Shown: positions 6,501 through 55,980 of the stretch, one piece after another
Numbering within the stretch: position 1 is the first letter of the stretch
How the letters are laid out: every line of letters begins with the position of its first letter
Assembly (NCBI GenBank): GCA_051294905.1
Contig: CM119374.1
Location: forward strand, 17,360,001 to 17,424,000
Origin: Botryllus schlosseri
Lineage: Eukaryota
DNA length: 64,000 bases
Reading direction: 5' to 3'
The notes under the pieces: model-generated
What the model saw: only the letters and a program-made list of their open reading frames with translations
Database searches by the model: none
Told to the model about the DNA's origin: nothing
Made by a program: the position numbers and the translations under genes

Positions 6501-9500
6501 CACCTCTTTTCGGCGGGATTAATAAGGAATTTGACATACCATATCCAGCATAGCCTGTGCGAGTGTGCGTACATTACCACCTATTTTCTGCGTTATCATT
6601 AATGACTTAAACAACGCCTACAAGTGCATTCAATTTGCTGCATAGGCGTCTGATAAGTGCCAAACATAACCGGCTGATTCCGCCGATCCCTAAAGCATTC
6701 AAAACGTCACCTATATACAACAGCTTCAGCCAAATAAGATCACACAAAGTATAGTGTCATTGTTAAGCATTATATATTTGTATTCACTGATGACGGATCC
6801 GTACTGAAACGGTGAATTCGCTCAACACTTGCATAGGCGCCTTTACTTTATCTCGATGAAAACACGGCATGTAGGCTTCAGCCGTTTCCTTCACAATAAA
6901 GCAGTCATGCTGTAAAAGCTTCTGGTAAGCAGGTGTTGTTTGTTCATCATGTATTTCGTAACTCAACATGTCCTGAATTAATCTTGAATCATCACCTGCC
7001 AAAATACTAACAATGCCCACTCAGAATCCCCGCCGGTAGCAGACTTCTTGAACACCTAATCAGCAAACTGCTGCTGCCGTGACCATTGAAGCATAGCCGA
7101 TTAACCAATCAAGAGCCGTTGTTATTTGATTACTAGTCTTCTCGCCGTTCTATGGTCGGTGGCACGCCCATTCTTGAGCAGCTACTTTCAAACGCTTTGA
7201 CCGAAATCTTAACGGCATTTCTGTTAGCTTCTTTCAGGCTAATTGTTGTTTTTTATCAATAATCTATAGAATGAGACACAATCACGGAGACTTTTTAAGA
7301 TTTTCCAAATTTTGGACAACCCTAATGGGCATACGGTTCTATATCAAATGATATTCCTCTGTTGAGAAGCCCAAAACTGCAACTGGAGATGCTGTAGCCT
7401 GTAGTAGATGAATTTCTTTTCGAAAAGGCTCCGACAGGGAAGAAGCGGAAAGGGAAGAAGAAGAGGAAGTTCTGGCGATTCAACGGAGGCTCGCTTTGCA
7501 AATCGATGAGGATGACTTTGATTTGGATATGTTAAAGGTAGATTTTTAGATACTGTCTAAGTAGTGATCGATGTTGCTTGGGCACAAGAACTTAAGATCT
7601 CATCGGAAGGTTTCATATTATCCGTTGTGTCTCAATTGCTGGATATCTGATACCAGTGTTGGGATTAAGTCACCGCCTTCGAGTCGTGTAAAGTCACTAG
7701 ATTTTTTGAGGTGACTCTTGTCAAGTCACAAGACATGTCGAATTTTGAAGCAGCATTTTGCAAGATGATTGAGTCTCTATTAATTCTGAATCAAGTAACG
7801 AATATCGAGTTAAGTATGCCTTCAACGGGTCATTGTGTGGCTCACATAGACCTAGATCTACTAGGTCACGTCGATAACTGTCCGCCAAATAGATAATAGA
7901 ACATGAAGCTTCAGAATGTTGAAACAAATTGATATGGTGCAGTACACAATCCACCTACACATCCATACGATATAATTTTAGCCTGTACCCTGTGCCAATT
8001 GTTGAGCAGTACAAAGTAATAAAGCAGTCCGATTTTAATTATGCAAGAGGTTCGTTAAGATTAGTACATTCAAAATGGGTCGCGTCATGAGAGTGAAGAA
8101 TTTCAATTTGTTTGAGTGAGGTTTAGGAATTGAACTGGATTTAGACTGTCACTGATTTGACGCTCGTTACTTTAAATGCGTCGTTAGTATGACACTCTAT
8201 ATTCTGAATGGCTAGCTAATATGACATACGAGCTAACGCAAGCTCTGTCACGAGTGCAACTGCTTTAATCAGTGTGGAAGTTAAAGTGAAAACAAATTAA
8301 GGGTTTCATCCGTGGTTGTCTGTGTCTCTCTCTCCTGTAGGCATAGCATTTTCTGTTAGTGATTGGCCTACCCGATCACATCGGTTATTGTGTGCTTTCT
8401 ACTCCCACAGACGACCGAAAAGACAGAAGACGAATCTGCACCGAAAGAGGTCGTGGAAACGGATTTCAGTTCTCTCTCACGAAAGGCTCAATGGAAGCTT
8501 CTGAAGAAACAGTCACCCGAGCTGGACGGGCTGGTCACCGAGTTCAAAGTGCGTTGTATATTTGTTACGGTATTTGTTTCTTCACCTCCTCGCAATTGTG
8601 AACTGCACCAACTGCATGTACATGTTGAAGTAGTGTCTGTGTTCCTCGTACTATCATACAAGGGTGTGCGAGTTTGACTAGCGCACTGTAGAAATGAAGC
8701 AGTAAAAATGTGGGCCGCATAGATAGGCTGCTCGGTAGTTAAAAGGAATCTGGTAACAAATAAAATTCTTTATCGGACTACGTGTAACAATCCAAAATAT
8801 CTGAAGTTTAATCATGAGTAGCGTGAAAAACAATTGGAGGTTGTCGAATGGATTTGGTCGAGATATTCATGCGCAAAGTCAGTGTATGCATATTTCAAGT
8901 GTTTTTCTCCTTTTTCTCAGGCCAACTGGGCTTGGCTTGAACGCACTTGGCTAAGGCAGGAACCAGGCCTCAAACTATTCGAAATTGTCACTTCTTCCCA
9001 GGCCGCACCAATATTCTCTTCTGGCCTCAGTCCGGATTCTAAAAAATCATGAATCCAAACCTAATCTGACTAAATGTTCACGTTTGGTTATTTCATATCC
9101 AAATCCAATGCTTATCACTAGTGTTAATATACTGAATCGATTTTCTCTATATATGTCTCTCTGTTTAGATACAGCGGTCATCCTCTTTCGTTTGTTTCAG
9201 GAGAAAGTTTCGGAAATGGAAACGGAACTGTGCCCGCTCATGCAGATGATAAGGCAAGGTCTTATTCCGCAGGGCTACGGCTCGGATTTTATAAGTCTCA
9301 AGTACAGAGTCTATCTCGCTTACGTCATGAACATATCGTTCTACCTCATGTTGAAGACGAACAGAACGCCGGTTCACAGTCATCCCGTCATATCGAGGCT
9401 GGTGCAGTATAAGACGGTGAGTGACTGAGTCGTCTCGTGTTTGATCGCAAGGTTTTGATCGTCATAGTTGTAACAATAGGTGGACAAAGTAGTCATCGCG

Positions 9501-12500: not shown

Positions 12501-15500
12501 AAAAGGCAACGCTGCAAATCCCGAATTCTCGGTCGCAATGAATGAGAAACTGGAGGAAGGCAGTGGTGACGAAGCCAAGTGAGTAAAAGTAGTGTTATCC
12601 ATGCCTTGTATCAAGTATGTGCGACTAAACAAGCCCGGAGTGCTTCAATTCCGACTCGAGCATTCGAGTAGCCCTGATTATGATGTTATCACATTACGGA
12701 TGACATGGAGGGCTCGAATATACCTTTATGCGTATGCAAACAACGTAATGCCAGTTTCGTCACGTCAGAATAAGTTTTTGTCTATATTCGGCAGCACTCC
12801 TTATTTGTCATTTGGCTTTACCTGTGTCGGGATCACTGCAGATTGACGTTCGGCATCATAGTTTGGCATCCTTACCGCCTCCCAGCTATGTTCTCTGGCT
12901 TTAGACTGGTACTGGAATGGATGTTGATTATCGGATTTAGAGCGTCTTAAAGATTGTGATGCCAATGTTCTCTCCACTGAGCTACGACGTAGCATACGAT
13001 AATTCTGTTCTTGACCGCCATTTTCTTGATTTAGATCGGATAGCGAAGATGCGGAGCCCGGAGAGGAACGAAGAGCAATTAATGATAAGGTGATTTCAGT
13101 TTTTTTTTGCGTTTATTGACCGTAATTGAAGGACTGAATTCTGTCGTTGGGCTTTGTCATTGAGATGAAGATCCTGCGATACGCATTACCGCAAGTACAT
13201 TGAAGTGGAGTCATATTTTCGGGTTACCATATTTTGGAAATCTGAAAAGCGGGCACTTTTCAAAATTTTCAAATTTGAGTTGCAAAACCGGAGGAAAATC
13301 CTGTAAAAATGTGGTCAATTTTTCCCACATCGTGGTCGATTGACTAAAAAAAATGTCAACTTTCTTAGTCATCTCCCGAGAAATACACTTTTTCTTTCAC
13401 ATCATCAGGGGGTTGACTCAAAACTAAGGTCAGCTTTCCGAATCAGCTCCCGAAATACCCACCAGAACATTATTTCAATGCTCATTTACGGTATTTCAGT
13501 CGAATTTGACGACAATTCTCAGAAAAGATGGCAAAATCTCAAAAATATGACGTATGGTAACCCTATCGTATTTCTTTCCCTACGCATCACTTGATCCACT
13601 ATCACTAGAGCGATTTTTTTTGACAAATAAAGTGAAAATTTTGTCGAAGTCCAAAGTCAAAAATTTTTTGCAACCTGCATTTCGTTTGTGTCGTAGGTTT
13701 TGCACTGTCGGTGAACTTGTCATTTGACATTTTACAGCTTGTAGCCTACTTTATAGGTTTACCGTTGTAAACATTCAAATGAAACAAATAGGTTGACATG
13801 GTGTTATGCTCAACGTACCGCGATAGCCTAACTGACGCAAGACTGTGTGGGCACTGGGCATTGCATGGTTCTTATATCGAGAAGCGCATGATGAAATATT
13901 GTGATGTAGACACCATTGTCAGAATGAAGCAACACGGTGGTCGGTGTGTCACCTGCAGTGTACGCTATGGTTGTTCAGAATTGACCGACTCAAAAAGTCA
14001 TGGTTTTCAGTCCGATTCCCATGCCTTATCCCTCAAAACCATATTCTAGCTACTTTTTTTCTGTAACTGATCCCTTGCGTCTGCGTGCATGTTGAGCTGG
14101 AAAATCGGCTGGAAATGGGGATTTCCCTAAAATTTGAGTGTCGCGATTTTACCTAGCCTACTAAAATGCCATATATGTGAGGGTTTGAGCGGCTGCTGTG
14201 GTTTGGGGTGATGCAAAACATCACTGTAGGTGTAGATATTTTTCCGAATTCAGCACACCTTTTTCATATTGCGCACTGCCTTGGAAATCCTCAAACTTAC
14301 CTAGTTACCAAGTGAGAGAGAGAGAGAGAGAGAGAGAATTCTTTTATTCGTCAACCATGAAATATAGTGAAGGCAATGTACACAAACAATTCACGTCCAA
14401 TAGTATACATTTTTTCCTACTATATTTTACATGGTATAGACTGGGAGACCCGATATGACCGAAGTCTTCTAGGCCGGAGTCACCCAAGCATATTGACAGT
14501 ATTAATAATATTATGAATCAATTTCTTCTCTCAGTCGAGTAGCACCGGAAAGAGTAACGAAATAAACAAAAGTAAATAAAAGACAGCAACACTAGTGAAG
14601 GACGGTTATCATAGTTAACAGTGTGATCAGACAATTTGACCCATGTACACAGTGGTAATAATATTGTAACATATAAAATGAAACAAAACAACGAACAACA
14701 TCACTGTGGTCATGAGATATGTTCTTCTTAGTACTTGGATAATATAAATATGCAATAGCAAGCTTTAAACGTATTACAGCAAAAAGTTACAGCAAAAAGT
14801 AGAAGCAATATGCTTTTAAAGCGTGGGAAACGGACTGAAAACCATGACTTTTGAAAGTCGGTCAATTCTGAACAACCTTAGTGTACGTACAACTTCAGTG
14901 TTGTCAGCTAAAGACTGCTGCTGTTGAACGTTCGTTCTCCATTCTTGGCAAACTACTTGGTAAGGACAGACACTTTCTGCCCGAGAATGTAGGAAAGTAT
15001 CTTTCGTTGTACTAAAACAAATTTACTAATGGAATTCTTCAGAGGACCAGATTTCATTGAAATGAAGCTTTTTCATGTAAAAATATGTCAGTTTTTGAGT
15101 CAAAAAAGTTTTTTCAGGCCAAACTACTTAATGACAGACAGTTTCAACCAGAAGTTAGAATGGGAAAATACCTAATTTGCATACGTTACGTTTTTTAAGG
15201 TAAAAAAATGTCAAAATATTGATTGTTAGGTAAAAAAATCGCCATACCTATCACATAACACACAAGCACATGCATGGGCGCCAACTTCTATACTTGTACG
15301 AGTTGGCGGAGTCTTGTGACGTCATAATCATTCCATAATCGGTGACGTCACAGTCGCACTAGAATGCACTTTACTACATGCCGCTGAGTGTTAAACCACT
15401 GTTGTGACGTTTCAATACCGGTCCTGCACTCATTATATATAGCCATACAGTCGAGTTATTAAATGGAATCCTAAAACGGTAGCCTACGATCATTCAAAAG

Positions 15501-16990
15501 TGGAACTGCGTTACCAGTCCATGTGACGGCAATGGATTTATTAGAATATAGAAGGTTCACGTCCAAATGCATCCAATAACATTGGAGTTTATGTCACTGA
15601 GAATTTTGTGTTCCATCAATGTAATTGACGCACAATGACGAAATATACTACGCAAGTTCGCAATACGCAACAACTCTGGAATAAGATGTTTCAAGCAGAC
15701 AAGAATGTAGATTACAAACACAGAAGAGTGCAATCAATCAGAGATTGTTTTCCGATTAAAAAAGCAATTTTGGAGGCATTGCTGTACTTTCCGATTTACG
15801 TTCGAAAAGCATTTTTGGAATATGTCAGTGTGTATATGTTTGTATACGAGAAATCGTGCATCTAATCAGTGTCTCGTCTCTTGCGTACAGCACGAACGGG
15901 TTCTGATTGTGGAATCGTATCGAGAAGCTCCGTCTCGCGACAATTGTTTTCTCGTTATATCAATGTTTAAGCTGTTATGCCGTATTGCTACATTTCCCAA
16001 TTAGTGTTGACAAATCCTTGTTGGAGAAACGAATATGCGCAGGAATCAACTCCTATTCACATGCATACACCACAGTGTCCTATATGGCGTGGACACAAGC
16101 AAATCTCACGACTCAGTGAAATTATGTCACACTTTCCATTTCGCTAAAGGCAATTTGACGGTAATTTTTGACCGGCTTGCCGAACGCGAAATTTGTTAAA
16201 ATTGCCTTTAGCCAAATGGAAAGTGTGACTTGGACCAATTCCACTGAGCTGTGAGATTTGCTTGTGTCCACACTGTCCAATTTCGCATTCTGATTAAAAA
16301 GACTGTCATGAAACTTGCTCAAGAATTCTGTTTAACACGCTTATGGATGCAAATCCAATATAATAATACTTTAGTGAACCTAAACGTCTATTTGGTCGCC
16401 AGGACAACTATAAGCTGCAGTCTTACTATGTAGTTCATTTCTTTTTTTTGTTGCTCTGCAATAGCCTAACTTCAAGGACCACGCATTTTCAAAAGTTTGT
16501 CTTGCTAAACATCACATAAATTCAAAACAAAAATGACATATTATTTGGTTCGCGAGCGTTCACGTCCCTTAAAATGACAGGCAAGTATTATACAATTAAA
16601 TTATGTGGGCACCGCATGGGTGTGTGTGGGTACTGCATGTATTTAATGTCAATTGTTTGAAAGAGCATTAAAAACAGTGATGATTCAAACGTATATGGTG
16701 GAGTCGGATTCGAATCATATGTGATTCGATATCTCTTGTCATGCCGTAAAACCCTGGATGCACAGTTATGCACTTCTTGTTTTGCCGTCTAGATTGCCAA
16801 GAACAGGGGACTGAAGCAGAAACGAAGAAAGATCGACCGAAATCCGCGCGTAAAAAATCGAGAGAAGTTCAGGAAAGCCAAAATACGGAGGAAGGGTCAC
16901 GTCCGCGAATACAGACAGGAACTGAAAAAATACTCGGGCGAGGCGTCGGGAATTCGTATCGGCGTCAAAAAGAGCGTTGCGTTACAATGA
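545..16990 (+). CDS. UTP3: Something about silencing protein 10 / U3 snoRNP-associated protein 3 (SSU processome), 12 coding exons, about 454 aa
   Basis: GT-AG exons with consistent phases: 545-567, 673-727, 798-905, 2491-2560, 3494-3568, 7428-7537, 8411-8548, 9201-9416, 10872-11069, 12460-12578, 13035-13089, 16793-16990 (1365 nt in total). Peptides include YFDDEIDKFH, AWGRKKSAFYGTD, KKQSPELDGLVTEFK, YVMNISFYLMLK...HSHPVISRLVQYK (Sas10/Utp3/C1D domain) and C-terminal IAKNRGLKQKRRKIDRNPRVKNREKFRKAKIRRKG...YSGEASGIRIGVKKS (Sas10 C-terminal domain). Confidence 0.93.
1717..2381. mobile_element. Foldback (Mutator-like) non-autonomous element with 9-bp minisatellite arms, in UTP3 intron 3
   Basis: Inverted arms 1717-1978 and 2112-2381 with termini GGGTGTCTTTGATTTGTACATG...CATGTACAAATCAAAGACACCC, built of GTC(A/G)CCAAT units. 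Perfect 9-bp TSD GCTTTATCT at 1708-1716 and 2382-2390. Confidence 0.88.
2961..3225. mobile_element. Small MITE, family copy 1
   Basis: Inverted termini ATATCGTGGCAGTGGTATCGAAGTAGC / GCTACTTTGATACCACTGCGACAATAT; related in sequence to 11691-11940. Confidence 0.6.
3854..5736. mobile_element. hAT (Charlie/Buster-like) non-autonomous element nested in the palindromic element
   Basis: TIR CAGTGGTTCCCAACC...GGTTGGGAACCACTG; perfect TSD CTATAGAT (3846-3853, 5737-5744); GCGGCACAC subterminal motifs at both ends. Confidence 0.9.
3928..4186 (+). mobile_element. tRNA-derived SINE
   Basis: A box TAGTGTAATGG and B box GGTTCGATCCC with no pairing acceptor stem; central segment GGGTCATACCAAAGACTCGAAAAATGGTATCTGCAGC; (CT)n tail at 4172-4186. 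Confidence 0.75.
11691..11940. mobile_element. Small MITE, family copy 2
   Basis: Inverted termini TATATCGTCGCAG...CTGCGACGATATA; internal sequence is inverse-similar to 2961-3225. Confidence 0.6.
13606..15246 (+). mobile_element. hAT-like deletion derivative with transposase C-terminal remnant, carrying a nested insertion
   Basis: TIR TAGAGCGATT / AATCGCCATA; TSD ACTATCAC / CCTATCAC. About 14907-15013 encodes TAAVERSFSILGKLLGKDRHFLPENVGKYLSLY* (ERSFS motif of the hAT C-terminal region). An uninterrupted inverse copy lies at 27217-28084. Confidence 0.75.
13966..14880. mobile_element. hAT-type MITE nested in the previous element, containing a LINE 3' fragment
   Basis: TIR TA(T/A)GGTTGTTCAGAATTGACCGACT; TSD GTGTACGC / GTGTACGT. 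The site is empty in the 27217-28084 copy. The interior has, on the minus strand, AATAAA followed by a (TC)n tail at 14314-14348. Confidence 0.75.
16071..16276. mobile_element. Short, older palindromic member of the CATAGTGTCC family
   Basis: CACAGTGTCCTATATGGCGTGGACACAAGCAAATCTC... folds back on ...GAGATTTGCTTGTGTCCACACTG; homologous to the arms of 50975-51590. Confidence 0.65.
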
Positions 16991-17439
16991 TTCTTGTATG
17001 TAGCAATGTTCATGTGGTTTTTGCATTCGTATAAGTACGATCGCGCGGATTATACTTCATCAAATTTGGCAGCAGTCTACTATTCCAGCGGATAGGTTCA
17101 ATAAGTCGTAAACATCAGTTTCAGTCTTCACTTCGCGATACTGGTGAGGTCTTGTTACGATGGAGTTATGGCACTACGTAAGATGATTAGACTGAAGTAC
17201 GACTTCTGGTGGAAGTCGATCGTGAGGTCAGAAAAAGGCAGCTAGATTTTGATCTATATCTCGGCGATTTAACTGATATGAGCGGTTGCGAGGATTTATC
17301 TACACCCGGGGGATTTCGTCTCGATGAAACTCGCGGGTTATGTATAGTATACTACTTATACGTTCATCAGTAAAGTTTGAGCGACAAACACAAGGAGGCA
17401 TGTGGCGGAAGGTGAGGTTGGATGTATGATAGGGTTACC

Positions 17440-19354
17440 GGTACGTGGACATATTAGCATGCGACACAATAGCAAGCGACACTTGAGCATAGCGACTTTT
17501 GGTCATGGCGACTCGTGGGCATGTAGACATATCAGCACAGGGACATATTAACATGAGGACATATTAGCATGGATACACGTGAGCATAGGGACACATCAAC
17601 ATGGTGACAATTTAATAAGTGCCACTTGAGCATGGTGACACATGAGCATGCGATACATGAGCCTTGACGACACATGCGCATATGGACACATGGGCATGGG
17701 GACATAAAAGCAAATGTGCACATGAGCATGGGGTCATGTACGCATGCGACACTTGAGCATGCGACACGTCTACATGCAGACACTTGAGCATGCGACACGT
17801 GGATATGCAGACACTTGAGCATGCGACACTTGGGCATGCGACATTTGGGCATGCGACACTTGAGCATGCGACACTTGAGCATGTGACACTTGAGCATGCG
17901 ACACTTGAGCATGAGACACTTGAGCATGCGACACTTGAGCATGCGACATTTGAGCATGTGGGCATGCTACACTTGAGCATGCGACACTTGGGCATGCGAC
18001 ACTTGGGCATGCGACACTTGAGCATGCGACACTTGAGCATGCGACACATGCGTGTCTTGAGCGACTTTTGAGCATGCGACACTTGAGCATGTGACCGTAT
18101 AGATTTGTCTGAAAAGCTCCAAATATCACGGTAAAGCGATAAAGGTTGTCATTGCTCCACATATATTGGAATCGTTTACACGTATCAGACGAACTAAAAG
18201 AATATATCCTTTTGTGAGACGAAAGCGATTGCAAATTCGCATTTCGACACGGGACTTGTTATATTATTTTAATTTTACGTGCCGCGGGTGGGTAGGGGGG
18301 ACATTAGGGTTGGAGGTGGGTTAGGGTTATGATTAGGGTTAGGTTAGGGTTAGGATTAGGGTTAGCTTAGGGTTAGGATTAGGGTTAGGTTAAGGTTAGG
18401 TTAGGGTTATGATTAGGGTCCATGTTGGGGTTAAGGTTTCCCAAGATTAGAGTTGGGGGGATGGATATTAGGGTTGGTTAGGGTTAGAGTCAAGGTATCC
18501 CAAGATTAGGGTTGGGGGTGATGAGTATTAGGGTTGGGAGGGGGATATTAGGGTTGGTTAGGGTTAGGGTTAGGGGTAAGGTATCCCAACAGTAGGGTTG
18601 GGGATGATGAGTATTGAGTATTAGGGTTGGGAGGGGGGATATTAGGGTTGGTTAGGGTTAGGGTTAAGGTGTTAAGGTATCCCAAGATTAGGGTTGAGGT
18701 GATGGGTATCAAAGTTGGGAGCGGGGATATTAGGGTTGGAGGAGGAGAGATATATCATTTTCGGACTGGTATAAATCCATGATTTTGACGCTAGTTAACT
18801 ACACACTAAGAAATGACAAATGCACAAGTGTCGCATGCTCAAGTGTCGCATTCTCAAGTGTCGCATTCTCAAGTGTCGCATTCTCAAGTGTCGCATGCTC
18901 AAGTGTCGCATGCTCAAGTGTCGCATGCTCAAGTGTCGCATGCTCAAGTGTCGCATGCTCAAGTGTCGCATGCGCAAGTGTCCCCATGCTCATTTGTCAC
19001 CATGCTAACATGTCACCATGCTCATACATCACCATGCATAAGTGTCAACATGCTGAAGTGTCCCAATGGTTATGTGCCCCCATGCTCACTTGGTACTATG
19101 CCCATGTGTAACCATGTTGATTAGTCCCCATGCTAATGTGTAACCATGCTCAAGTGTCGCATGCTAATATGTTTCCATGCCCATGTGTCCCCTTGCTCAT
19201 GTTTCACCATGCTGATATGTCCCCATGCGCATGTGTCCCCATGCTCATGTGTTCCTATGCTCATGTGTTACCATGCTAATGTGTCCTCATGCTATAGCGT
19301 CGCATGCTAAACTGTCGTTTTTCATTGTGTCGCATGCTCATATGTCGGGCAACC
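17440..19354. mobile_element. Foldback (Mutator-like) element with 15-bp minisatellite arms and a telomere-like core
   Basis: Termini GGTACGTGGACATATTAGCATGCGACACA and reverse-complement GGTTGCCCGACATATGAGCATGCGACACA; perfect 9-bp TSD AGGGTTACC (17431-17439, 19355-19363). The left arm has (CACTTGAGCATGCGA)n and the right arm the inverse (TCGCATGCTCAAGTG)n. Confidence 0.88.
18304..18740 (+). repeat. Interstitial degenerate telomeric-type repeat (TTAGGG/TTAGG) with higher-order units of about 75 bp
   Basis: Many TTAGGG, GTTAGG and ATTAGGG units; recurring block GGATATTAGGGTTGGTTAGGGTTAG...AAGGTATCCCAA; G-rich on the + strand only. Confidence 0.9.
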
Positions 19355-19793
19355 AGGGTTACCATACGTCTTTCTTTTTCATGTTTTTGAAAATGTCCTC
19401 CCTTTTGGGAATTCTTCCTTTACAGCTTTTAGAGCAGAGGTCTCAAACATGCGGCCCGCGACGGCATTTTGGAAATTCAAGTGTTCAATAATATATTCGA
19501 ATGCCCTGTATCTTTTTTAGATATAAGAGCTTAAAGTTCACGCTAAAACTACTATAAAAATCACTGAAATGTCGAAGAAATTCACTATCACATCACTTTT
19601 AAAAGCTACCATGCTGTAAAGATCAGCTATTACGACACATTTCTAGTTCATGATGATATAACTTTACCCGAAGATGTTATTTGGTTTGGTGCGACCTTCT
19701 CGTAAAATTACTCGATTTCGGATGACTGGGTGATTAAATAAAAATGACTCGAGTTGAGTCTGGACAAACGTTAAAATCAGAGATAGACTAGTG

Positions 19794-21068
19794 CAGGGGT
19801 TCTCAACCCGCGGCCCGCGGGCCGCATGCGGCCCGCAGACGCTTTTTCTGTGGCCCGCGAGATCTTTCAATATGATCGCAATTATTACCGGCACAGTTAT
19901 GTTGTATACTGTATCAATTTAGCTACTAAAGCTCTCTTATCGCTCCGTCTCTGTTTCGTTTGATTTACTCTCATTCTTCAATGTTTTCTGGTTTCTTGAT
20001 ATATGGTCGAGTTTAGATTCTCATTGTTCTGAATAGGTCTTCGGACAGTTCCATTTCGAGTTACACATATCACCTGATCTTAGAAAAAAGCGTTGCTAGC
20101 TAGGTCTCAGGCTAAGCAATCCATATTTTGAGGCATTGTTGAGATTGCCGACGACGTTGAAAATGCATGGTTCAAAATTGCTTGGTGTATCGCTAAACCC
20201 ACGGAATCTGTTGGAGAAGGTGTTTCTCCAACAAAACGTTACTATAATGTGCGAATCTCCGCTGTTTCCGGAATTTAGCAGCAAGGGCAACTTCACCTAA
20301 CAAATTTCGAAGATGCCGTTGTCTGATTCAACCGTGACAAGAAGAGTAACAGCAATGTCAGTTAATGTTTCGTCGCATGTTTTGAACGCGTTGCCCCGTA
20401 GACTACTTTAACCTAGCATTGCACAAAATCTACGGACATTGCAACGCTAATTGTATTGAGGTATTCTATCAGAGTGGATATATTTGTAGACGTAATGCTG
20501 GATGGGCAAACGTGGGTAGAGGGGACTAGCAAACAACATCAACTTAATTACAAAGCTGACTTCTGTAACTATTGGTGCAGGGCATCAGCCATGGAAGGAA
20601 AGGAGAATGGTTGATTGGTTTGCTCAGAAATTACCCCGGACATGAGACTTCTTCTCATATCACTGAGAGCCCAAAGTGACAATGGCCTCTGTAAAGAAAA
20701 AGTTACCGTAGTTTTATACTTGCTCGCTCACGCATTGAAACAGAGAGTTCAGTTCTCTTGTGCAAGGGTTTGAAGGTGCACATACCGACTTGGGAACGAA
20801 TGCAATGCGCGCTTCATGAAGGGATTTATTGTTCCTTCGGAAGATGACACAATTTCACTAGAAACAGCAACTGAAAGCTTACGAACGCTGTCCATTATGC
20901 TGTAGAACGCATACAAACTAAATGCCCATACACGACTGGTAAATAGGCTATATTAGCCTAAATATAATAGTATAGTCCACGAATATACAGGTAGTAATGT
21001 TCTGCGGCCCGCAGCGCATTTTGCTGTTAAAATGCGGCCCGTTACGCAAGGAAAGTTGAGAACCCCTG
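19794..21068 (+). mobile_element. Internally deleted hAT Buster/Charlie-type transposon
   Basis: TIR CAGGGGTTCTCAAC...GTTGAGAACCCCTG; perfect TSD GACTAGTG. Degenerate transposase motifs include KMPLSDSTVTRRVTAMS (about 20310-20365) and KLTSVT...AMEGKENG. Confidence 0.85.
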
Positions 21069-29991: not shown

Positions 29992-34765
<4,774 letters not shown>

Positions 34766-37700
34766 ATTTGGAGCAATGCACTTAATCGACTTTGCGACTA
34801 CCCAATACACTCCCCTCCCTTTGTTAGTTCTAACGCTTGTCGGTGCGCATGAGCAGAATTCTTCTGTCGTCCACAGTTGACTTTGGTGCAGTGTCCTGTT
34901 TTCTTTGCGGGGGACCGTCTCCGCGTCCCACCCGGATGGGTCGTTTTTCATTTATTATATTCTATCGGCGTCTGTATCATCGACGGAAGACCGACGCTAT
35001 TTACACTGAGCCCCTGTTTCGACCTGGTTGTCCCAATAGCAGCCTTCATCATTTTCCCCGTATGTGATTGGCGTCGTCGAACATTTGCTGACTTTTTTTC
35101 GTTTGTAAAAATGGCGTGATACGATAATTTTTGCTTGTTCGCTTCTTTGAGGGCTGGCTGCTCTTGACGATGAATTTTCCGAAGAAAAAAACTGAAGACC
35201 AACTCAGATTCGTTGGTCAATCATTTTACTTTCTCTAATATGCATATATCTATTAGCCTGTTGAATGTCTTGAGCCGGTATCCCTAATTCTGCTTACGAT
35301 AGTGGCGTCCCATTTATGGGATCTCATTCATATTACTAATACAATACAATACAGGCGGAGCATTCACTACTACTTTTGTTTTGAATAAAAGCAGCTTTTA
35401 AATGACGCTATTTAAACAGATTAAAAAGAGCATTCCTGGTTTTGCCAAGAAATTATAGGTTCTCAGTTCTGTAGTTGGGGCTCATGCTGTCGTGCAGCGT
35501 CAGAGTAGATCGTTGATTCCGTTTTTCTATGGTCTTTCACTTGTAATACACGTACCCCACCGAAGTGATATGGGTCATCAAAGTTGTACAGAATCATGAC
35601 GAGATCTGCGAGTAACATGAAGTTATAGGCCACATCTAATTTAGCGGTGAAAACATTGATCTATGTTTTGATTCTGGATGGGTGTATCTGATACAGGGTA
35701 TAGGAGTACTGTTCGGTGCTTGAAATGACTTCGTCGAGGCTGTTGTCACGGGACGCAGTGTCTACAATGGCGAATATAAGTTGCTGGTTTGTGATGTACA
35801 AAAAGAAAACCTTTCGTACGTGGGGTTACCAATACGTCCTCTTTTTGATTGTAAGATTGTAAATGTCCTTCACTAATGAATGGGGTCAACCGGAAATCGA
35901 CATAACTGACACGAAATAGGTAATGCGTTCAAGCGGGCCATTCGGGAGCCGAATATGTATGTTTACTTGGGCAAGTTTTGTGGCAGTTAATCCGTGGAAA
36001 GTTGCATTTATTTTTGACAAAAGTTGCACTAAAATATAGTTTCAGTACTTCGTGTAAACAATTTCAAGAACTCGTTAAAATGATGATTCCTTATTGACAG
36101 GAAACCACAAAATATTCATGGGAATAATCAGAAAACTATGTTTGATTTGTTACTTTTGTCACTTCTATCTAACTATCCAAGGAAATGTAGAACAAGCTCA
36201 AACGCAACAAATAACGATTCGACTTTCCTTTCACTTGTCGGCAAAAATACTCTCTTTTTGGTGCTGAAAATATGGTAGGCCAAGTTAAAGAGCAATACAC
36301 ACTTGATGATAAATAGCCCATAGCTATGCCCACAATAGCCAAGCGAATTCATTAAAATATATACATCGGGATGGAAAATGACCCCCAAATCTTTAGCAGA
36401 TCTTTTGCTGGCTCAACACTTTGATACAAGCTCTGCCTATCGCAAATTATACATGAATATCCGCCTTCTCAAAAATATTTATGAACGTTCATAATCTGTT
36501 GCTCGAACGTATCAGCGGTCCCCACCAGGTGGGTATAGCTCAGTGGTTCAAAAGCACGCGACCCGTGGACCAATGAGACATACGCTAAAATATTCAAGTG
36601 TTCCGACTTTTCTTGCTGTGTAATATAATCTAATGAACGACAGCAAGCTAAATACAAATGTTTGGTCGTAACCGTCAAAATATAGGCTAGAATAAATATA
36701 TTAACTCAATGTTGCCCTAAATCAGTGGTTCTCAACCTTTTTTTGAACACGCCCCCCTTTTTCATAGTAAAAAATTTCGCGCCCCCCTTATCGTCATATC
36801 ACAAAATCCAAATGCTGGGATGCTAGCAACCCCAACAGATTCTTTGGTGGTATGGTCGGTTATGAATGTTGATGAGAGAATAAAAAAATAAGAAAATGGG
36901 TCTATATAGAGCAGGGGTTCTCAACCCGCGGGCCGCATGCGGCCCGCAGACGGTTACTTTGTGGCCCGCGACGTCTTTCATTATGAACGCAATTACTACT
37001 GGCACGGTATTGTTACATATAAATTGTCTTTGTAATTGTAATTGATTACTCATTGTTGTGTTCTAGTTTCTTGATATATGCTTGAGTTGATTGTTAGGCC
37101 TATTGTTTTGAATGGGTATGCGGCCGGACTCTTGTTCAAGAGAATCCCTCTGTGTAGTACACACTTTTAAAAAGTGTTTCCCTCGCCGTGAATGGTTTGA
37201 ACAGAAACAAGAACAAGGAACGGGAAATTAAACAGCGAAAATTGAATTTGTAACTCTGCGTGGAAAAATGAATGTGTTCTCTCAAATATTGATTGAAAAC
37301 CGATGTGTCATATGCAGGCCGTGTTATTTTTATCATATGCCAAAACTAACTTATTTTTGGCATTTTTCGATTTTTATTTTTGGCAGTTTTGGCATCGTCC
37401 TCTAAATAGATAGTTTCAGCCTCGAATTATTCACAAAAACGCTTTATTTGGGCTAGTTTGTCAAAAGACACCACAAAATGTGCAGCATCCACTTATAATC
37501 AGTGCCAACAAACAATAGGATGAAGAAAAAACCTAACGATTTCATAGGTTAATAATATCAAACGAAACCACAAAATGTGCAGTATTCATCGGAATCGGTG
37601 CCAATAAGCAAAAACAGAAAGAAAAGCCTAACAAACACGCTCAGCAGCTGATTGTTACAGCTGTTGAATAGACTTAAATCGTTTGCACTGTAACAGTGCT

Positions 37701-42360: not shown

Positions 42361-45300
42361 GTGAATGAGGCAGAAGCCTGGCTGGAATGGAAAAAGAAAT
42401 TCCTGATCTTTATCGATGCAGCAGGTCATGCTGAATCACCTGGGCGCCAGAAAGTTGGATTATTACGGCAATTCATAGGAAAAGAAGGAAAGGAAATATA
42501 CGAGGATTTCGTGTTTGCTGAAGCAGTCGCAGAATCAGACGGTGTGGAAGCAGTTGCAGCAGAAGACAAAACTGACCTTGATACCGTCTTGAAGAAGTTT
42601 GATGAACGTTTCAAGTTTCGGGATGGCAGGTTTGAAGCACACCTTCAATTCTTCCATTTCTTACAACGCAAAGAGGGTGAATCATTTGCATCTTGGGTAC
42701 ATGCAGTCAGAAAGGCTGCACGAAAATGCCAATTTCCTCCAGCAGTGTACGACGCAACCGTTCGGGCTAAACTTATTGTCGGGTGCGTAGATGATTCTGA
42801 GATGTTGTACAAGCTATCGGAAATCGACTTTGACAAGCTAACGTCTCAGAAGATTATCGACGTTGTGACTACACAGGAGACGAGACGGAGCTATGCTGAT
42901 CGGAGATCTGCACCTACAGCAATAGAAGCGGTGGCCAACAAAGCGAGACCTCAAACTTTTAAGAAGCCTGCAGTTGAAAGTGTGCCTGTAATAAACTGCA
43001 CATTTTGCGGTCGACGACACAAAAGAGGCATAGGGTTCTGTCCAGCAGCCTCAGTAAAATGCTACAGATGTGGTAGAACGGGCCATTATAAGGAAAGGTG
43101 CAGAAGTAGAAATGTACGCGTGCTGGATAGCGAAACGATTGAGGAAGAACCAAGCGCTGAGTGTTATGACGAGGAAGAACTTCCAGACGCAATGTGTGGA
43201 AGTGTGGGCGAAACCCAGGAAGCAGAAGCATCGGTAGGTTCAGCACAGGCTACTAAGACTATCCAGTGGACTATCATGTTGAGAGTCGTTAACAACACTC
43301 TGAAATGGATTGTTGACTCTGGAGCAGAAGTGTCTGTCATGCCGCGGCGATTGTACAAGAGACAATATGGGCCTATACAGAAATCTGATAGACGGCTCAT
43401 TGGAGTTAATCGACAACCTCTCAATACTGTTGGTTTTGTACGGATGAAACTCAGCTCCGACTTCAAGGCGTTAACAGAGAAAGTCTACATTGTATCGGAT
43501 GCGGATAAGCTACTCCTTGGCGCTCCTGCTATACTGGAACTTGGACTTCTTCAAGAGTGCCAGGATGTTCAAGTATCCATCAGGGCCGTCAAACTTACCC
43601 CTGAGAGTCGTTTGCGGAGCAAAGATGACGTCAAGAAAGCATACCCAGAGCTATTCAAAGGCATTGGCAAACTGGGAGAGCCGTTTACTATTCACATGAA
43701 AGACGGCGTTGAGCCCTTCTGTTTGAATTTGCCACGTCGTGTGCCAATCCCATTGCGCCAGAAACTCAAAGAGGAGATAGATAAGCTTGAAGAGCTCGGT
43801 ATCATAGAAGAAGTGACGGGACCTACAGATTGGTGTGCTCCAATCGTAGTCGTAGCCAAACCAGACGGAAAGGTGCGACTGTGTGTAGACCTAACCAAGC
43901 TCAATAATGGGGTAAAAAGGGAGCTGTACCCTATGCCTACAGTCGAAAGCACTTTGGGGCAACTGTCAAAGGGGACGGTCTTCACTAAGCTGGACGCAAA
44001 CTCTGGATTTTATCAAATTGAGCTCTCCCCTGAAAGTCGAAAGTTGACAACGTTTATCACACCGTTTGGGAGATATCAATTTCGTCGCTTACCACAGACT
44101 TGGACAACTAGAAAATTTTCAGCTTTTCTGAATTAGATTAGAATTAGAATTAGAGCTCCACAGTTTTATTCAAACTAGATTAGAATTAGAATTAGAGCTA
44201 CACAGTTTTTTCCAAATTAGATTAGAATTAGAATTAGAGCTACACAGCTTTTCTCAAATTAGATTAGAATTAGAATTAGAGCTACTAAGCTTTTTCCAGA
44301 TTAGATTAGAATTAGAATTAGAGCTACTTAGTTCGCAGAAACTTGGAAATTGAATGAAATTGTATATGGGAAATGAATACAGCAAAATGCAGTTCACATC
44401 AAATCACAGTGCGTGGTGCAAAAGGCCGTGAGGCGATAAGCACCACATATTTTTGTTTAATAAACAACAACAACAGTGCATTCCCATAACCATGAGAATG
44501 GTTAACTTCTGTACACCAAGCTTGGCTCGATTTTTACTATACTTTAATGAAATATTACTTCTTTTATGGTAACCGTGGGCATCGCCCATGTTAGTCAGAA
44601 TGGCGATGTACTAACGTAAGGTTTTAGAAACTAGAATGTTGTTCGCAGACTACAAGCTACTCTAGCAGGCTATTGTTCGTCATAATATCTACTATGACTG
44701 CACGGTGTAAGTAAGGAGATGGCGGCTTGGCACTGGATTTCCCTGCGCAAGAGGGATATTCTTTTTAACTCACTGCAATAGTACAATATGCCTCGGACAA
44801 AGAGGAATTTTCAGGAAAACAATAATTAGATTAGAACTAAAATGAGAGAATACGGACATTTCACAAATTAGATTAGAATTAGAATTAGAGCATAAGAACA
44901 TTTCACAAATTAGATTAGAATTAGAATTAGAGCACGGAAGCATTTCACAAATTAGATTAGAATTAGATTACTGGCATTTCGCTCTAATTTAGTGAAATTA
45001 GACAACTAGAATTATCTAGTTGTCCAAGTCTGGCTTACCATTTGGCATCTCGAGCGCACCGGAAGCGTTCCAAAAACGTATCAGTGAAATCCTGCAAGGA
45101 ATCCCAAACGTGATTTGCCATATGGATGACATCCTAGTAGTTGGCACTCAAACTACGCACGATGAGACGCTGAAGGCTGTATTGGACCGTCTAAAATGCT
45201 CTGGCATTACTCTAAATGAGAAGAAATGCATCGTTGCTGCAACTGAACTTGAATATCTCGGTCAGGTCATCGGCCAAGATGGTATCAGCAAAGATCCAAA

Positions 45301-47305
45301 GAAGGTGCAGGCTATTGTGAATTATGCTGCTCCTACTGATAAGACTGAACTTCGCAGGTTCTTGGGAATGGCAAACCAGCTCATGAAGTTTAGCTCCAAC
45401 CTAGCGGAACTGACCAAGCCGTTACGAGAATTGTTGGCGAAGAAGGTTGAGTGGTACTGGGGCCCGTCACAAGAGGAATCGTTTGCAAGAGTGAAACGCG
45501 ATCTGTCTTCCGATGTTACATTAGCTATGTATTGCCCAGACAGGGAAACTGTGCTCTCAGCTGACTCCAGCAGTTACGGCCTTGGTGCCGTTCTGATGCA
45601 AAGACAAGATGACAATAACCTTCGCCCGGTCGCATATGCCAGCAGATCAATGAGCGACAGTGAACAACGGTACGCCCAGATAGAAAAAGAGGCCTTGGCA
45701 ATCACTTGGGCAATGGAGCACTGGAGAGAACTCTTACTGGGTATTGAAGATCTGAAAGTTGAAACTGACCACAAGCCACTAGTGCCTCTGCTCTCAACGA
45801 AATCGCTTGACGAATTACCTGTCAGAATTCAAAGATTCAAAATTAGGCTGATGTCCTATAACTTTGCAATTTTCCACACGCCAGGAAAGTCGATGTACAC
45901 AGCAGACGCGCTATCACGATGCCCTTTGCCGACAACGGATGGCATCGAAGACACCGATCTTCACAAGGAAGCGGAAGCATGTGTGCGTGCTCTGGTCAGC
46001 GGGCTGTCTGCTACTGACCGACGCCTGGAAGAAATAAAGAATGCTCTTAAAGAAGACAAGACACTGTCGACTGTTATGACATATGTTGTTGGAGGATGGC
46101 CAAAGAACAAAGAAACTTTAAATGGACCGGTGCGTATCTTCTGGAATCTCAGAGACGTGTTAACAGTACATGACAATCTCTTGCTAAAAAGCAACAGACT
46201 CGTCATACCACCGCCGTTGCGCGAAGATGTTCTGAAGCACCTTCACCAATCGCACCTTGGAGTAACCAAGACCAGACAACTTGCAGCACAAGCTTGCTGG
46301 TGGCCGGGTTATTCAAAAGACATTGAACATGCAGTACTCAACTGCAACCGCTGTGAAAAGCATCGACGTGATCGAACTGAACCGATGATGGGGACCGAAT
46401 TTCCGACACGCCCATGGGCTAGAATTGCTGCTGATTTTTTCCAACTGGAGGACAAGTACTACCTTTTGATCATGGATTACTACTCCAGAGACATAGAACT
46501 GTTCTCAGTAAAGAAAACGATCTCGTCACGGGACACAATTTCTCACTTCAAGAATGTGTTCTCTCATCATGGCATCTGTGATGTCTTGCTTACGGACAAT
46601 GCTTCGGTCTTCGTTTCCTCTGAATTTTCTCAGTTCTCCAGAGCCTGGAATTTTCAGCACCTCACCTCTTCTCCAAAATATAGCCAGGGCAATGGCTTCA
46701 TCGAGAGAGGAGTACAAACTATAAAGGCCCTGCTCAAGAAAACAGATGATGTCTATCTGACGCTACTGAACTATAGAAACACGCCCTTGCACTCCGGCTT
46801 ATCGCCCGCCCAATTGAGCATGGGACGCAGATTGAAGACAAAGGTGATTTGTCATCCTGACCAGCTACGGCCACAGACTGTTGATGTCGAAGATCTTCGA
46901 AAAAGGGAGACGGAGTATAGACAGAAAATGGCTGCGAGTTACAATAAAAGACATCGTGTGGTTGAGAATGATAGATTCGGAATTGGAGACCATGTATACA
47001 TTCCTGATTGCGAAAGGATGGGTATCATCAAGGAGATGCATGAAAATCCTAGAGCGATCATCGTTGAGACGAACAATGGACTAATGAGGCGTAACCGAAA
47101 ACACTTACGGAAGTACAACCCTCCGGAGGAACCCAAACCATCTGTTCCGCATCAGAATAAACCGGTTGAATATTGTCTTGTAGCGTCGAAGAAACCAGGA
47201 CACCGTCAAGAAGCCAACGGTTCATCTGAACCTACCGGAGAGAATCCCGCGAGACGATCCTCGAGAATTAGAAATCCGCCACAACGATTTATTGAGCAAT
47301 ATTGA
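42361..47305 (+). mobile_element. Ty3/Gypsy LTR retrotransposon gag-pol (single frame, split by a MITE)
   Basis: CCHC knuckle CYRCGRTGHYKERC; protease VDSGAEVS; RT WCAPIVVV / LDANSGFYQI / HMDDILV; RNase H ADSSSYGLGAVL and EKEALAI; integrase HQSH...CNRC with ADFF / TDNA / IERGVQ (DDE). Domain order PR-RT-RH-IN. Confidence 0.96.
44095..45032. mobile_element. 938-bp hAT-type MITE inserted in the Gypsy RT
   Basis: TIR CAGACTTGGACAACTAGA...TCTAGTTGTCCAAGTCTG; perfect TSD GCTTACCA (44087-44094, 45033-45040); TTAGATTAGAATTAGAATTAGAGC subterminal arrays. A partial second copy lies at about 50480-50793. Confidence 0.93.
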
Positions 47306-47680: not shown

Positions 47681-48900
47681 ATCATCATCATCATCATCAT
47701 TGGTTTATTAGCAATTTTATCAGTTCAATACACCACAAAAAATGCGATACAATGAATAGACAGGAAGATGTCGAAGCGACTTGGATTTGTCAATGGAATC
47801 GGACACCCACCTTGGCCTAGGCGTAGTAAAGAGGAGGCATGCACACTGAATGGAAGTAAAGAATACAGTATAGAAAAAGAAAGCGACAAGAAATAGGGCG
47901 GCATGTCATGGGAAGCGAGATCGATAGGTCAGTCGTGGTCCGGTAATCTTGAGGATGGACTGTATTTATTTAGTAGTAATTGCTTGTATTTCGACTTGAA
48001 TGTGGACATGCTCGTCGACTGTCGGATGGCCGGCGGGATACTGTTCCACACATCAGGTCCGGCATATTTGATGGAGCGATGATCTTTTCGGTCGATCATA
48101 TGATATTTGGACGACGTGGACGCGCGTGTGTTGTACTTGTGCGCTTTTGATTCAGAGGTAAAGAAGTCATTGAAATATTCGTGGCAACGACCGCAGTGAA
48201 ACTGATACATAAACTTGGCGATTTCTAGTTTCCGCATATCTTCTATGTTTAGGACGCCGAATCTCTTCAGCAGCGACTTATTGGATGGGCAGCCAGGCCC
48301 CTTTGGGGCCCTAGCTATGATTCGGAGCACTTTATGCTGTAGTTTCTGCAGTGGCTTGAGTGCAGTTTTACTGGCAGCCCCCCAACAGAGGATGCCATAA
48401 TGTAACTTCGATTGGATTAAGGATTTAAAGAGTATCAGGAGAACCCAGCATGCTGGCATGAAGCGCCCAAGGCTGTAGAACAGGCCGCACTTCGGTGATA
48501 ATTTAGTTTCTAGGGACTGAATATGACTCTTCCAGGACATGTTCGAGTCCAGTAAAACTCCGAGATATTTGGCATTATCTGTGTTGGAAACGGGCTGACC
48601 AGCGATATTAACGGTTAGGTTATTTTTTGAATTGACTGTCAGCAATTGCGATTTCGAGGCGTTTATGCAAAGGTTGTTCTGGGCCGTCCACTCATGGACT
48701 TTGGGCATTTGGTCACCAGTCAGGGCATCCAGCTCTGCCGTCGAAGATGCGGAAGAGAGGAGGTGAGTATCATCAGCGAACAGTGTGGTGTTCAATGAGG
48801 AGGTTTCAAAAATGTCGTTGACATATAAGGTGAAAAGGACCGGTCCAAGTACTGAGCCCTGGGGCACACCACAGGTCACCGGGTGAGGAGAGGACAAGGT
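47681..48900 (-). mobile_element. 5'-truncated CR1/L2-type LINE with open RT C-terminal frame
   Basis: ORF 48897-47929: GVPQGSVLGPVLF, FADDT, KYLGVLLD, GPDVWNSIP; followed by a 3' UTR, AATAAA and a (TGA)n tail at 47681-47700. Confidence 0.9.
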
Positions 48901-53712: not shown

Positions 53713-54368
53713 ATCAAGCTTTGTCCGGACAAAATCTCCTGAATTGACTGCTATAACAAGCTCCACGTTAACCGAGTACAAAAAGACAACTGTTGCACGA
53801 TGTTCCAGTCACGGTGGGAAGCCAGCTTCAAAACTGACATGGATGAATGGCACAACATCAATGACGGGATCAGACACTGTCGTGACGGTTAACGCATTTA
53901 AAACCTATCTGAATGACTCTCATAGAGACCTGGTAATAGAGTCTCTTTCTCGTTATGATCACAACCGAGTATTCTCATGCAAAGTTGAACACCCTTCGTA
54001 TGAGGCACCGAAAATTCTAAATTATTCAATCCTTGTCATGCACCGTCCGTATAACATTCGAATATGGGCCAATGTCACATCGAAGATTATCTATTGCAAA
54101 GCAGAAAGCTACCCTACCCCCACATACTGGCTTTACTGGACCTTCTCACTATATAGCTGGCCTGTTCGATATTCCAGGCAACGACATATTTGAACGTACT
54201 GCTGAAAATGGGCTCGGTCCAGATGTCTCTATTCAAGTGACCGTCGATGACCTGCGTTATCCTGACGGAAAACCAGGATTGACTAAATTTCAGTGGCGGA
54301 TAAGGGCTGTCATGGTGAGTGCAGTATTACTTGGCATTATAATCACCATCACACAGAGAGTGACGTGA
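53713..54368 (+). pseudogene. Immunoglobulin-superfamily (nectin/CADM-like) fragment: two Ig-like domains plus hydrophobic tail, with a frameshift
   Basis: ARCSSHGGKPASKLTW...FSCKVEHPS (C2-type Ig) then YCKAESYPTPTYW; frame change near 54130; FERTAENGLG (Arg where Ig domains have Cys); then IRAVMVSAVLLGIIITIT before the stop. Confidence 0.6.
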
Positions 54369-55515: not shown

Positions 55516-55960
55516 TAGGTTACCATACGTCCTCTTTTAAGAGGATTTGTCCTCTTTTTTGACTTTTTTGAAAGTGTCCTCGGAGGACGCCCTTTTGTCC
55601 TCTTTTTTGAGATTTTGTCCTCTTTTTTGAAAATTTAGGTCAGATTTGGAGGAAATTGCGAGTGAAATGCCGCAAATTAGCGCAGAAGTGAAGCTCCGGC
55701 GGGTATTTCGGAGGGAAAAGCGGTGATTTTAGCTCTGAGCGATAAGAAGACCTTTTTTTTTAGTCATCCACCTGGCAATGTGGAGAGAAAAACGATATTT
55801 TGAGCTCTGAGCGGAAGAGATGACCTTTTTTTTTTTTTTAGTCAACCGATCACGAAGTGGGAAAAATTTACCGGTTTTTGAAAATTCTTCTCCAGTTTTG
55901 CATGTCTGAAATTTCTGAAAAAGTGTCCTCTTTTTACATTTCCAAAATATGGTAAGCCTA
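55516..55960. mobile_element. hAT-type MITE with GTCCTC subterminal repeats
   Basis: TIR TAGGTTACCATA / TATGGTAAGCCTA; perfect TSD TCGTCAAG. Relics of this family occur near 1665-1707, 19355-19420, 35822 and 36245. Confidence 0.85.
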
Positions 55961-55980
55961 TCGTCAAGTCAACATATAAC

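What the first reader, a model, noticed from the sequence alone, without database searches (positions are those of the whole stretch)
17440..19354. Mobile telomere-like cassette: foldback element carrying a TTAGGG core, inserted at a telomere-like target
Seen: a G-strand-biased TTAGGG/TTAGG tract of about 440 bp with higher-order units sits between inverted 15-bp minisatellite arms, and the whole 1915-bp unit has a perfect 9-bp TSD. The tract therefore moved as cargo and is not a chromosome-fusion relic. The TSD AGGGTTACC, preceded by T, itself reads TAGGGTTA and is the TIR of another MITE family. Known: TTAGGG is the common metazoan telomere repeat and such tracts form G-quadruplexes. Inference: a transposon family dispersing interstitial telomeric sequence could seed telomere-protein binding, fragile sites or de novo telomere addition.
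Basis: partly seen in the sequence, partly recalled or inferred. Interest (0 to 1): 0.75.

Follow-up and report, generated by a model that had tools for sequence, protein, structure and literature searches.

The report
Foldback transposon carrying telomere-like minisatellite
A 1.9-kb non-coding foldback-type jumping gene in a sea-squirt genome landed in the tip of another small transposon and carries a degenerate telomere-like repeat array in its middle; the build is a known kind, only the cargo is unusual, and no second copy could be fetched to show that the cargo is a family trait.

Summary
Window 17440-19354 is a 1915-bp element flanked by a perfect 9-bp duplication, AGGGTTACC. It has inverted arms built of a 15-bp unit. 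Its loop holds a 468-bp G-rich array with 23 TTAGGG, all on the + strand.

Removing the element and one repeat copy restores an 18-mer that occurs uninterrupted at 13550-13567. That 18-mer is the end of a MITE-like family with four other ends in the window. So this is a true insertion, not a fusion relic.

The core is not a telomeric tract. Only 30% of its bases lie in perfect hexamers and the longest run is 3 units. It is organised in 23-bp and 86-bp higher-order units.

My best reading is a non-autonomous foldback cut-and-paste transposon, either Mutator-like (FB/Rehavkus) or Merlin. Both fit the 9-bp duplication, and both ends begin with GG. The minisatellite sits in the middle domain.

Target preference, family-wide conservation of the core and any telomere-protein binding remain untested.

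Earlier notes of this scan list at least seven other TTAGGG-bearing transposons on other DNA of the same genome. I did not check them.

Interest is modest: a new member of a known kind with unusual cargo.

The parts
17431..17439 (.). Left copy of the 9-bp target site duplication AGGGTTACC
   Evidence: Read directly. It abuts the first base of the left arm.
17440..18095 (+). Left inverted arm. The outer part, 17440-17741, has degenerate 15-16-bp units. The inner part, 17742-18095, has 23.6 crisp copies of GCATGCGACACTTGA.
   Evidence: The terminus reads GGTACGTGGACATATTAGCATGCGACAC.
18096..18282 (.). Non-repetitive left part of the loop (middle domain). It has no coding capacity and no match elsewhere in the window.
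   Evidence: The protein word search on the ORF that spans it was blank.
18283..18750 (+). Telomere-like G-rich minisatellite. It has a 23-bp higher-order stretch at 18319-18419 and three 86-bp units at 18476-18739. It holds 21 YTAGGGTTR sites and the only 3 canonical G4 motifs in the 64 kb.
18751..18815 (.). Short non-repetitive right part of the loop
18816..19354 (-). Right inverted arm. The inner part, 18820-18992, has 11.5 copies of the 15-bp unit at 95% match. The outer part, 18993-19354, has degenerate 16-bp units. The reverse complement of the terminus reads GGTTGCCCGACATATGAGCATGCGACAC.
19355..19363 (.). Right copy of the target site duplication AGGGTTACC
19364..19405 (+). Continuation of the interrupted MITE end. 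Together with 17428-17439 it reads GATAGGGTTACCATACGTC followed by a T-rich stretch.
   Evidence: There is an exact 18-mer at 13550-13567 on the - strand, and similarity of 38 bp at 84%. Further ends are at 13222, 35824 and 55518.

Best explanation
Window 17440-19354 is a non-autonomous foldback-type cut-and-paste DNA transposon. It has no gene of its own, so a transposase encoded elsewhere in the genome must have moved it.

That enzyme would bind the two inverted arms, whose tandem 15-bp units probably act as repeated binding sites. It would excise the element and integrate it through cuts staggered by 9 bp, which produced the AGGGTTACC duplication.

The insertion landed in the last dozen bases of a resident MITE, 450 bp downstream of the stop codon of a UTP3/SAS10 gene.

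The telomere-like array sits in the middle domain of the element, next to the right arm. It is an old, degenerate, higher-order minisatellite that was most likely already there when the element inserted, so it travelled as a passenger.

Steps shown: the anatomy, the duplication, the restored empty site, the strand polarity and the degeneracy of the array.

Steps inferred: trans-mobilisation; the superfamily (Mutator-like FB/Rehavkus or Merlin); the arms as binding sites; presence of the array before insertion.
For: - The perfect 9-bp duplication sits exactly at the arm ends.
- Removing the element plus one repeat copy gives GATAGGGTTACCATACGT, which is identical to an uninterrupted 18-mer at 13550-13567. 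Similarity continues into the right flank, and the same end recurs at 13222, 35824 and 55518.
- The arms are long inverted tandem arrays with very strong foldback potential.
- There is no conserved ORF, no protein relatives and no Rfam or tRNA match.
- Published foldback elements share this build: arms of tandem repeats, a variable non-coding middle domain, and 8-10-bp duplications, as in Tetris (PMC4079207).
- Rehavkus elements have 9-bp duplications, inverted ends of 26-400 bp and a minisatellite just before the 3' end (PMC6446971).
- Merlin elements have 8-9-bp duplications, terminal 5'-GG and sometimes internal tandem repeats (PMC8101967). Both ends here begin with GG.
- No nested inverted ends or duplication bracket the core.
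- The 86-bp units are only 80-89% alike, while the duplication is perfect.
- Unchecked notes of this scan report autonomous Rehavkus/NOF and Merlin elements with repeat-built arms, and at least 7 other TTAGGG-bearing transposons, in the same genome.
Against: - Only one copy was seen. No second copy of the arms, loop or core is in the 64-kb window or in any collection I could scan. Mobility as a family, and conservation of the core, are therefore unproven.
- The outer arms are only about 72% alike, and the first 8 bases of the two termini match only at GGT.
- No transposase was linked to the element, so the superfamily rests on duplication length and terminal GG alone.
- A perfect 18-bp pair of duplications only bounds post-insertion divergence loosely, at about 15% or less. 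The array could in principle have arisen or grown after insertion.
Confidence: 0.7

Rival explanations
1. One-off chimera. The telomere-like array is not native to this arm family. It was acquired by recombination or template switching with another array-bearing element of the same genome, either before or after this insertion. Other copies with these arms would then lack it.
For: - Foldback elements are known for rearranged, modular forms (PMC4079207).
- Unchecked notes describe other elements in this genome whose arms or cargo are TTAGGG-like arrays, one of them with a 23-bp unit. The core here also holds a 23-bp higher-order stretch.
- An 11/12 AT-rich direct repeat at 18202 and 18750 brackets 18214-18749, which includes the whole array.
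Against: - No inverted ends and no convincing duplication surround the core.
- The 12-nt repeat is AT-rich and could be chance.
- The array has a single polarity, unlike a complete nested foldback.
Confidence: 0.2
2. Repair scar. The palindrome broke in its loop, and telomerase or break repair added TTAGGG repeats, as described for vertebrate interstitial telomeric sequences. The tract then degenerated and amplified locally. On this reading it is a product of hairpin fragility, not cargo.
For: - The G-strand polarity is strict, 23 to 0.
- The array lies in the loop of a very stable hairpin.
- Insertion of telomeric repeats at double-strand breaks is documented (PMC8537989, listed).
Against: - The array is long, at 468 bp, and only 30% of it is perfect hexamers.
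- It is organised in 86-bp units that hold non-telomeric spacers. This needs much more time than the intact 9-bp duplication suggests.
- The association of such arrays with transposons is reported repeatedly in this genome (unchecked).
Confidence: 0.08
3. Relic of a chromosome fusion or an ancient chromosome end, or an assembly artefact of a palindrome.
For: None beyond the presence of TTAGGG-like units.
Against: - The array lies inside inverted arms within one target duplication.
- The empty site is restored exactly.
- There is no head-to-head orientation.
- The two arms carry different unit variants, and their lengths differ at 656 and 539 bp. A collapsed or mirrored assembly would not give that.
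Confidence: 0.02

Closest known systems
Foldback transposons (Drosophila FB, Tetris of D. virilis, sea-urchin foldback elements)
   Same: Long inverted arms are built of short tandem repeats that are more regular inward. The middle domain is non-coding and variable. Duplications are 8-10 bp. There is no transposase in most copies (PMC4079207).
   Different: The host is an ascidian. The arm unit is 15 bp. The middle domain holds a telomere-like minisatellite, which the papers I read do not describe.
Rehavkus / NOF branch of Mutator-like elements
   Same: The duplication is 9 bp, the inverted ends are long, and a minisatellite sits just before one end (PMC6446971).
   Different: This copy has no PHD-finger transposase. 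Membership cannot be shown without the autonomous partner.
Merlin superfamily
   Same: Duplications are 8-9 bp, the termini are 5'-GG, and some families have imperfect ends and internal tandem repeats (PMC8101967).
   Different: There is no IS1595-type transposase here. Arms built wholly of minisatellite are not the typical Merlin build.
Telomere-bearing elements of ciliates (Oxytricha TBE)
   Same: They are DNA transposons that carry telomere-type repeats (papers listed).
   Different: In TBEs the repeats are at the very termini and are tied to programmed genome rearrangement. Here the array is internal and degenerate.
Interstitial telomeric sequences inserted at double-strand breaks
   Same: They are unidirectional telomere-like tracts at an internal chromosomal site (PMC8537989).
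   Different: Those are short, near-perfect and not bounded by transposon ends and a target duplication.

Membership tests
Foldback-type transposon | Long terminal inverted arms made of tandem subrepeats | tested here: met
Foldback-type transposon | Target site duplication of 8-10 bp at the arm ends | tested here: met
   A perfect 9 bp. The empty site is validated by a paralogous 18-mer.
Foldback-type transposon | Multiple dispersed copies with independent duplications | not testable with these tools
   There is no second copy in the window.
Mutator-like / Rehavkus | 9-bp duplication and a minisatellite before one inverted end | tested here: met
   The criterion is from PMC6446971.
Mutator-like / Rehavkus | Mutator-type DDE transposase with PHD finger, in the element or in an autonomous partner with the same ends | not testable with these tools
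   There is no coding ORF in the element and no such gene in the window.
Merlin | 8-9-bp duplication and terminal 5'-GG | tested here: met
   The criterion is from PMC8101967.
Merlin | IS1595-type DDE transposase in an autonomous partner | not testable with these tools
   None is in the window.
Canonical interstitial telomeric sequence (fusion or repair type) | Near-perfect hexamer array, head-to-head for fusions, with no transposon boundaries | tested here: not met
   The array has 30% perfect hexamers, a longest run of 3 units and a single polarity. It lies inside arms and a duplication.
Telomere-bearing elements (ciliate TBE type) | Telomere repeats at the element's termini | tested here: not met
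   The termini are GGTACG... and ...GCAACC. The array is more than 530 bp from either end.

The most novel reading that the evidence does not exclude
A set of ascidian DNA transposons uses TAGGGTT arrays as a working module. A telomere-repeat-binding (Myb/TRF-type) host protein, or the transposase itself, binds the array and tethers the element to TAGGGTT-containing DNA. This biases integration to such sites, here TAGGGTTA at a MITE end, and spreads protein-binding interstitial telomere-like sites and G4-prone DNA through gene-rich regions.
Probability: 0.06. Interest if true: 0.8.

Novelty: new member of a known kind. Interest (0 to 1): 0.33.

Why it matters
If the array proves to be conserved across copies, this genome would hold DNA transposons that scatter dense clusters of the telomere-protein recognition motif next to genes. 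This element has 21 YTAGGGTTR sites in 468 bp, and it also holds the only canonical G4 motifs in the 64 kb. That would give a simple transposon route to interstitial telomere-like sites and a handle for testing their effect on replication, chromatin and breakage.

As it stands, this is one well-preserved foldback insertion, useful for repeat annotation of the ascidian genome. It sits just downstream of UTP3/SAS10, possibly in the 3' UTR.

Tried and rejected
Attempts to fetch other copies, all blank:
- A protein word search with the arm-plus-loop ORF.
- Exact protein look-ups for an arm ORF and for the nearest real exon ORF.
- The arm 30-mer in the metagenome, viral and prokaryote genome collections.
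- A 29-mer from the core in metagenomes.
- The findings index searched by sequence.

Tools not used:
Read support, allele state and expression are therefore unknown.
- I did not use the large representative-protein search. The neighbouring protein (UTP3/SAS10) is not open and the claim does not rest on absence of relatives.
CDC42 starts at 30010, which puts the element about 650 bp beyond the 10-kb flank limit.

Readings rejected:
- A nested complete element around the core: no inverted ends and no duplication.
- A fusion relic: single polarity, and the array lies inside a target duplication.
- An alternative boundary that takes GGTTACC as part of the left end. It gives a slightly better end alignment but no duplication, and the uninterrupted paralogous 18-mer contradicts it.

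Rfam and tRNA scans of 13000-21000 were empty.

Full report
**Observation**

- AGGGTTACC stands at 17431-17439 and again at 19355-19363. The repeat cannot be extended by a base on either side.
- Directly inside it lie two inverted arms, 17440-18095 and 18816-19354.
- Both arms are arrays of the 15-bp unit GCATGCGACACTTGA. All 27 matches at up to one mismatch in the 64-kb window lie in the element, 16 on the + strand in the left arm and 11 on the - strand in the right arm. Chance would give 0.01.
- Tandem Repeats Finder gives 23.6 copies in the left arm and 11.5 copies at 95% match in the right arm. The outer parts of both arms are degenerate, with a 15-16-bp period.
- The inner parts are 90-96% complementary and the outer parts 71-77%. 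A global alignment gives 80% identity over 528 columns.
- The two termini share GGT, then differ for a few bases, then share GACATAT.AGCATGCGACACAAT.
- Folded as single-stranded DNA, the 1915 nt reach -456.8 kcal/mol against -256.5 ± 7.5 for dinucleotide shuffles (z = -26.6). In that fold, 407 of 656 left-arm bases pair with the right arm.

**The core**

- The loop runs from 18096 to 18815. Within it, 18283-18750 (468 bp) is 44% G and 5% C.
- The core holds 23 TTAGGG, 28 TTAGG, 22 TAGGGTT and 21 YTAGGGTTR, every one on the + strand and none on the - strand.
- Only four YTAGGGTTR sites occur in the rest of the window, counting both strands.
- It is not a telomeric tract. Only 138 of 468 bases lie in perfect hexamers, and the longest perfect run is three units.
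- It is a higher-order minisatellite. A TTAGGG/TTAGG-rich stretch with a 23-bp period lies at 18319-18419. Three 86-bp units lie at 18476-18739. These carry several ATTAGGGTTGG motifs, a short (TTAGGG)2-3 run and non-telomeric spacers, and they are 80-89% alike.
- The core holds the only three canonical G4 motifs of the whole window.

**It is an insertion**

- Deleting the element and one copy of the repeat rebuilds GATAGGGTTACCATACGT. This exact 18-mer occurs uninterrupted at 13550-13567 on the - strand.
- Similarity continues for about 38 bp into what is now the right flank.
- The same end, (GATA)GGGTTACCATACGTC followed by a T-rich stretch and TGTCCTC, recurs at 13222, 35824 and 55518.
- The ends at 13222 and 13556 face each other about 345 bp apart. 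Those at 55518 and 55962 face each other about 445 bp apart. That is the pattern expected of a MITE.
- So the foldback element landed in the last dozen bases of a resident MITE, and the paralogues confirm both the boundaries and the 9-bp duplication.
- This excludes a fusion relic. The two arms also differ in length and in their unit variants, which a mirrored assembly would not produce.

**What it is**

- There is no coding capacity. The ORFs in the element are translations of the repeats.
- A word search with the ORF that spans the loop and arm found nothing.
- Rfam and tRNA scans were empty.
- No transposase of a DNA transposon lies in the window. The long ORFs at 42361-47305 are a Ty3/gypsy-type pol.

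The build matches published foldback transposons: arms of tandem repeats, a variable non-coding middle domain and a 9-bp duplication. Tetris of Drosophila virilis is an example, with 8-10-bp duplications and assignment to Mutator on that basis (PMC4079207).

Two superfamilies fit, and I cannot decide between them without an autonomous partner.

- Rehavkus elements, a sister group of Mutator-like elements, have 9-bp duplications, inverted ends of 26-400 bp and a minisatellite just before the 3' end (PMC6446971). That is the position of the telomere-like array relative to the right arm.
- Merlin elements have 8- or 9-bp duplications and conserved terminal 5'-GG, and some have imperfect ends and internal tandem repeats (PMC8101967). 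Both termini here start with GG.

Unchecked notes of this scan report both kinds of autonomous element, with repeat-built arms, in this same sea-squirt genome.

**How it most likely works**

A transposase supplied in trans binds the arms. Tandem units as repeated binding sites is the explanation given for Galileo and proposed for Tetris (PMC4079207). The transposase excises the element and integrates it with 9-bp staggered cuts. These steps are inferred.

The array most likely travelled with the element, for three reasons.

- It lies inside the arms.
- No nested ends or duplication surround it.
- Its units have diverged by 11-20%, while the 18 bases of the two duplication copies are intact.

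This last argument is soft. Intact duplications only bound post-insertion divergence at about 15%.

**Rivals**

1. A one-off chimera with another array-bearing element. An 11/12 AT-rich direct repeat at 18202 and 18750 brackets the array. Another element of this genome is said to carry a 23-bp telomere-like unit (unchecked).
2. A repair scar in the hairpin loop made by telomerase, as for vertebrate interstitial telomeric sequences (PMC8537989). The strict polarity fits. The length, the degeneracy and the higher-order structure do not.
3. A fusion relic or an assembly artefact, essentially excluded as above.

**Target claim**

The duplication plus the preceding T reads TAGGGTTA. In this window a random 11-nt site holds an 8-mer of the telomere repeat with frequency 0.0003, and a 7-mer with frequency 0.001. 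The coincidence is therefore notable.

It is still one event, noticed after the fact, and the 8-mer is simply the start of an abundant MITE end. The reverse complement of the element's right terminus, GGTTGCC, also resembles the duplicated GGTTACC at 6 of 7 bases. I could not test whether that means anything. A target preference is neither shown nor excluded.

**Other copies**

None could be reached.

- Blank searches: the window itself, the protein word search, exact protein look-ups, the arm 30-mer in the metagenome, viral and prokaryote collections, a core 29-mer in metagenomes, and the findings index by sequence.

**What the scan found before**

Notes on other DNA of the same genome list at least seven transposons with TTAGGG-like arrays: foldback arms, head-to-head arrays, and a 23-bp array as cargo. 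One follow-up judged such an element a known build with an unusual motif. I did not check these notes. If they are right, the association is recurrent in this genome and spans more than one element type. That raises the value of a genome-wide census.

**Literature**

Five full-text searches found no description of foldback or other inverted-end DNA transposons of animals with an internal telomere-like array. The nearest case is the ciliate telomere-bearing elements, which carry the repeats at their termini.

**Context**

The element lies 450 bp downstream of the stop codon (16988-16990) of a UTP3/SAS10 gene on the + strand. The Sas10_Utp3 domain lies in ORF 8985-9428 and the Sas10 C-terminal domain in 16793-16987. 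No AATAAA or ATTAAA occurs between the stop codon and position 19700, so the element may lie in the 3' UTR. CDC42 starts 10.6 kb further on, at 30010.

**Verdict**

This is a well-preserved non-autonomous foldback transposon, a new member of a known kind, with an unusual telomere-like minisatellite in its middle domain. The functional ideas (telomere-protein binding, fragile sites, telomere seeding, target homing) are untested.

Noticed in passing
window 13221-13567; 55516-55962; solo ends near 17428 and 35823: A MITE-like family whose end reads (GATA)GGGTTACCATACGTC followed by a T-rich stretch and TGTCCTC. There are two inverted pairs, about 345 and 445 bp long, and two solo ends. One solo end is the foldback's target. 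No clear duplication was found for the 13221-13567 copy.
   Followed up: partly
window 8985-9428 and 16793-16990 (+): A UTP3/SAS10 gene. The Sas10_Utp3 domain exon scores 3e-15 and the Sas10 C-terminal exon 8e-22, with the stop codon at 16988-16990. No AATAAA or ATTAAA occurs between the stop and 19700, so the foldback may sit in its 3' UTR.
   Followed up: partly
window 42361-47305 (+) and 47929-48897 (-): A Ty3/gypsy-type retroelement. Gag knuckle and the start of RT lie in one ORF. The rest of RT, RNase H and integrase lie in the next ORF, so pol is split. A separate RT fragment lies on the opposite strand.
   Followed up: no
window 53744-54193 (+): An ORF with an immunoglobulin C2-set domain (1e-10), probably an exon of an Ig-superfamily gene.
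   Followed up: no
window 19789-19894 and 36907-37005: A GC-rich palindromic repeat of the GCGGCCCGCGGGCCGC type, 87% alike between the two places. It is probably the end of yet another MITE family.
   Followed up: no
window 18202-18213 and 18750-18761: An AT-rich 12-nt direct repeat, 11/12 alike, brackets 18214-18749, which includes the whole telomere-like array. It may be chance or a trace of how the array entered the loop.
   Followed up: partly
window 19348-19363: The reverse complement of the foldback's right terminus, GGTTGCC, resembles the duplicated target GGTTACC at 6 of 7 bases. This may be microhomology or chance.
   Followed up: no
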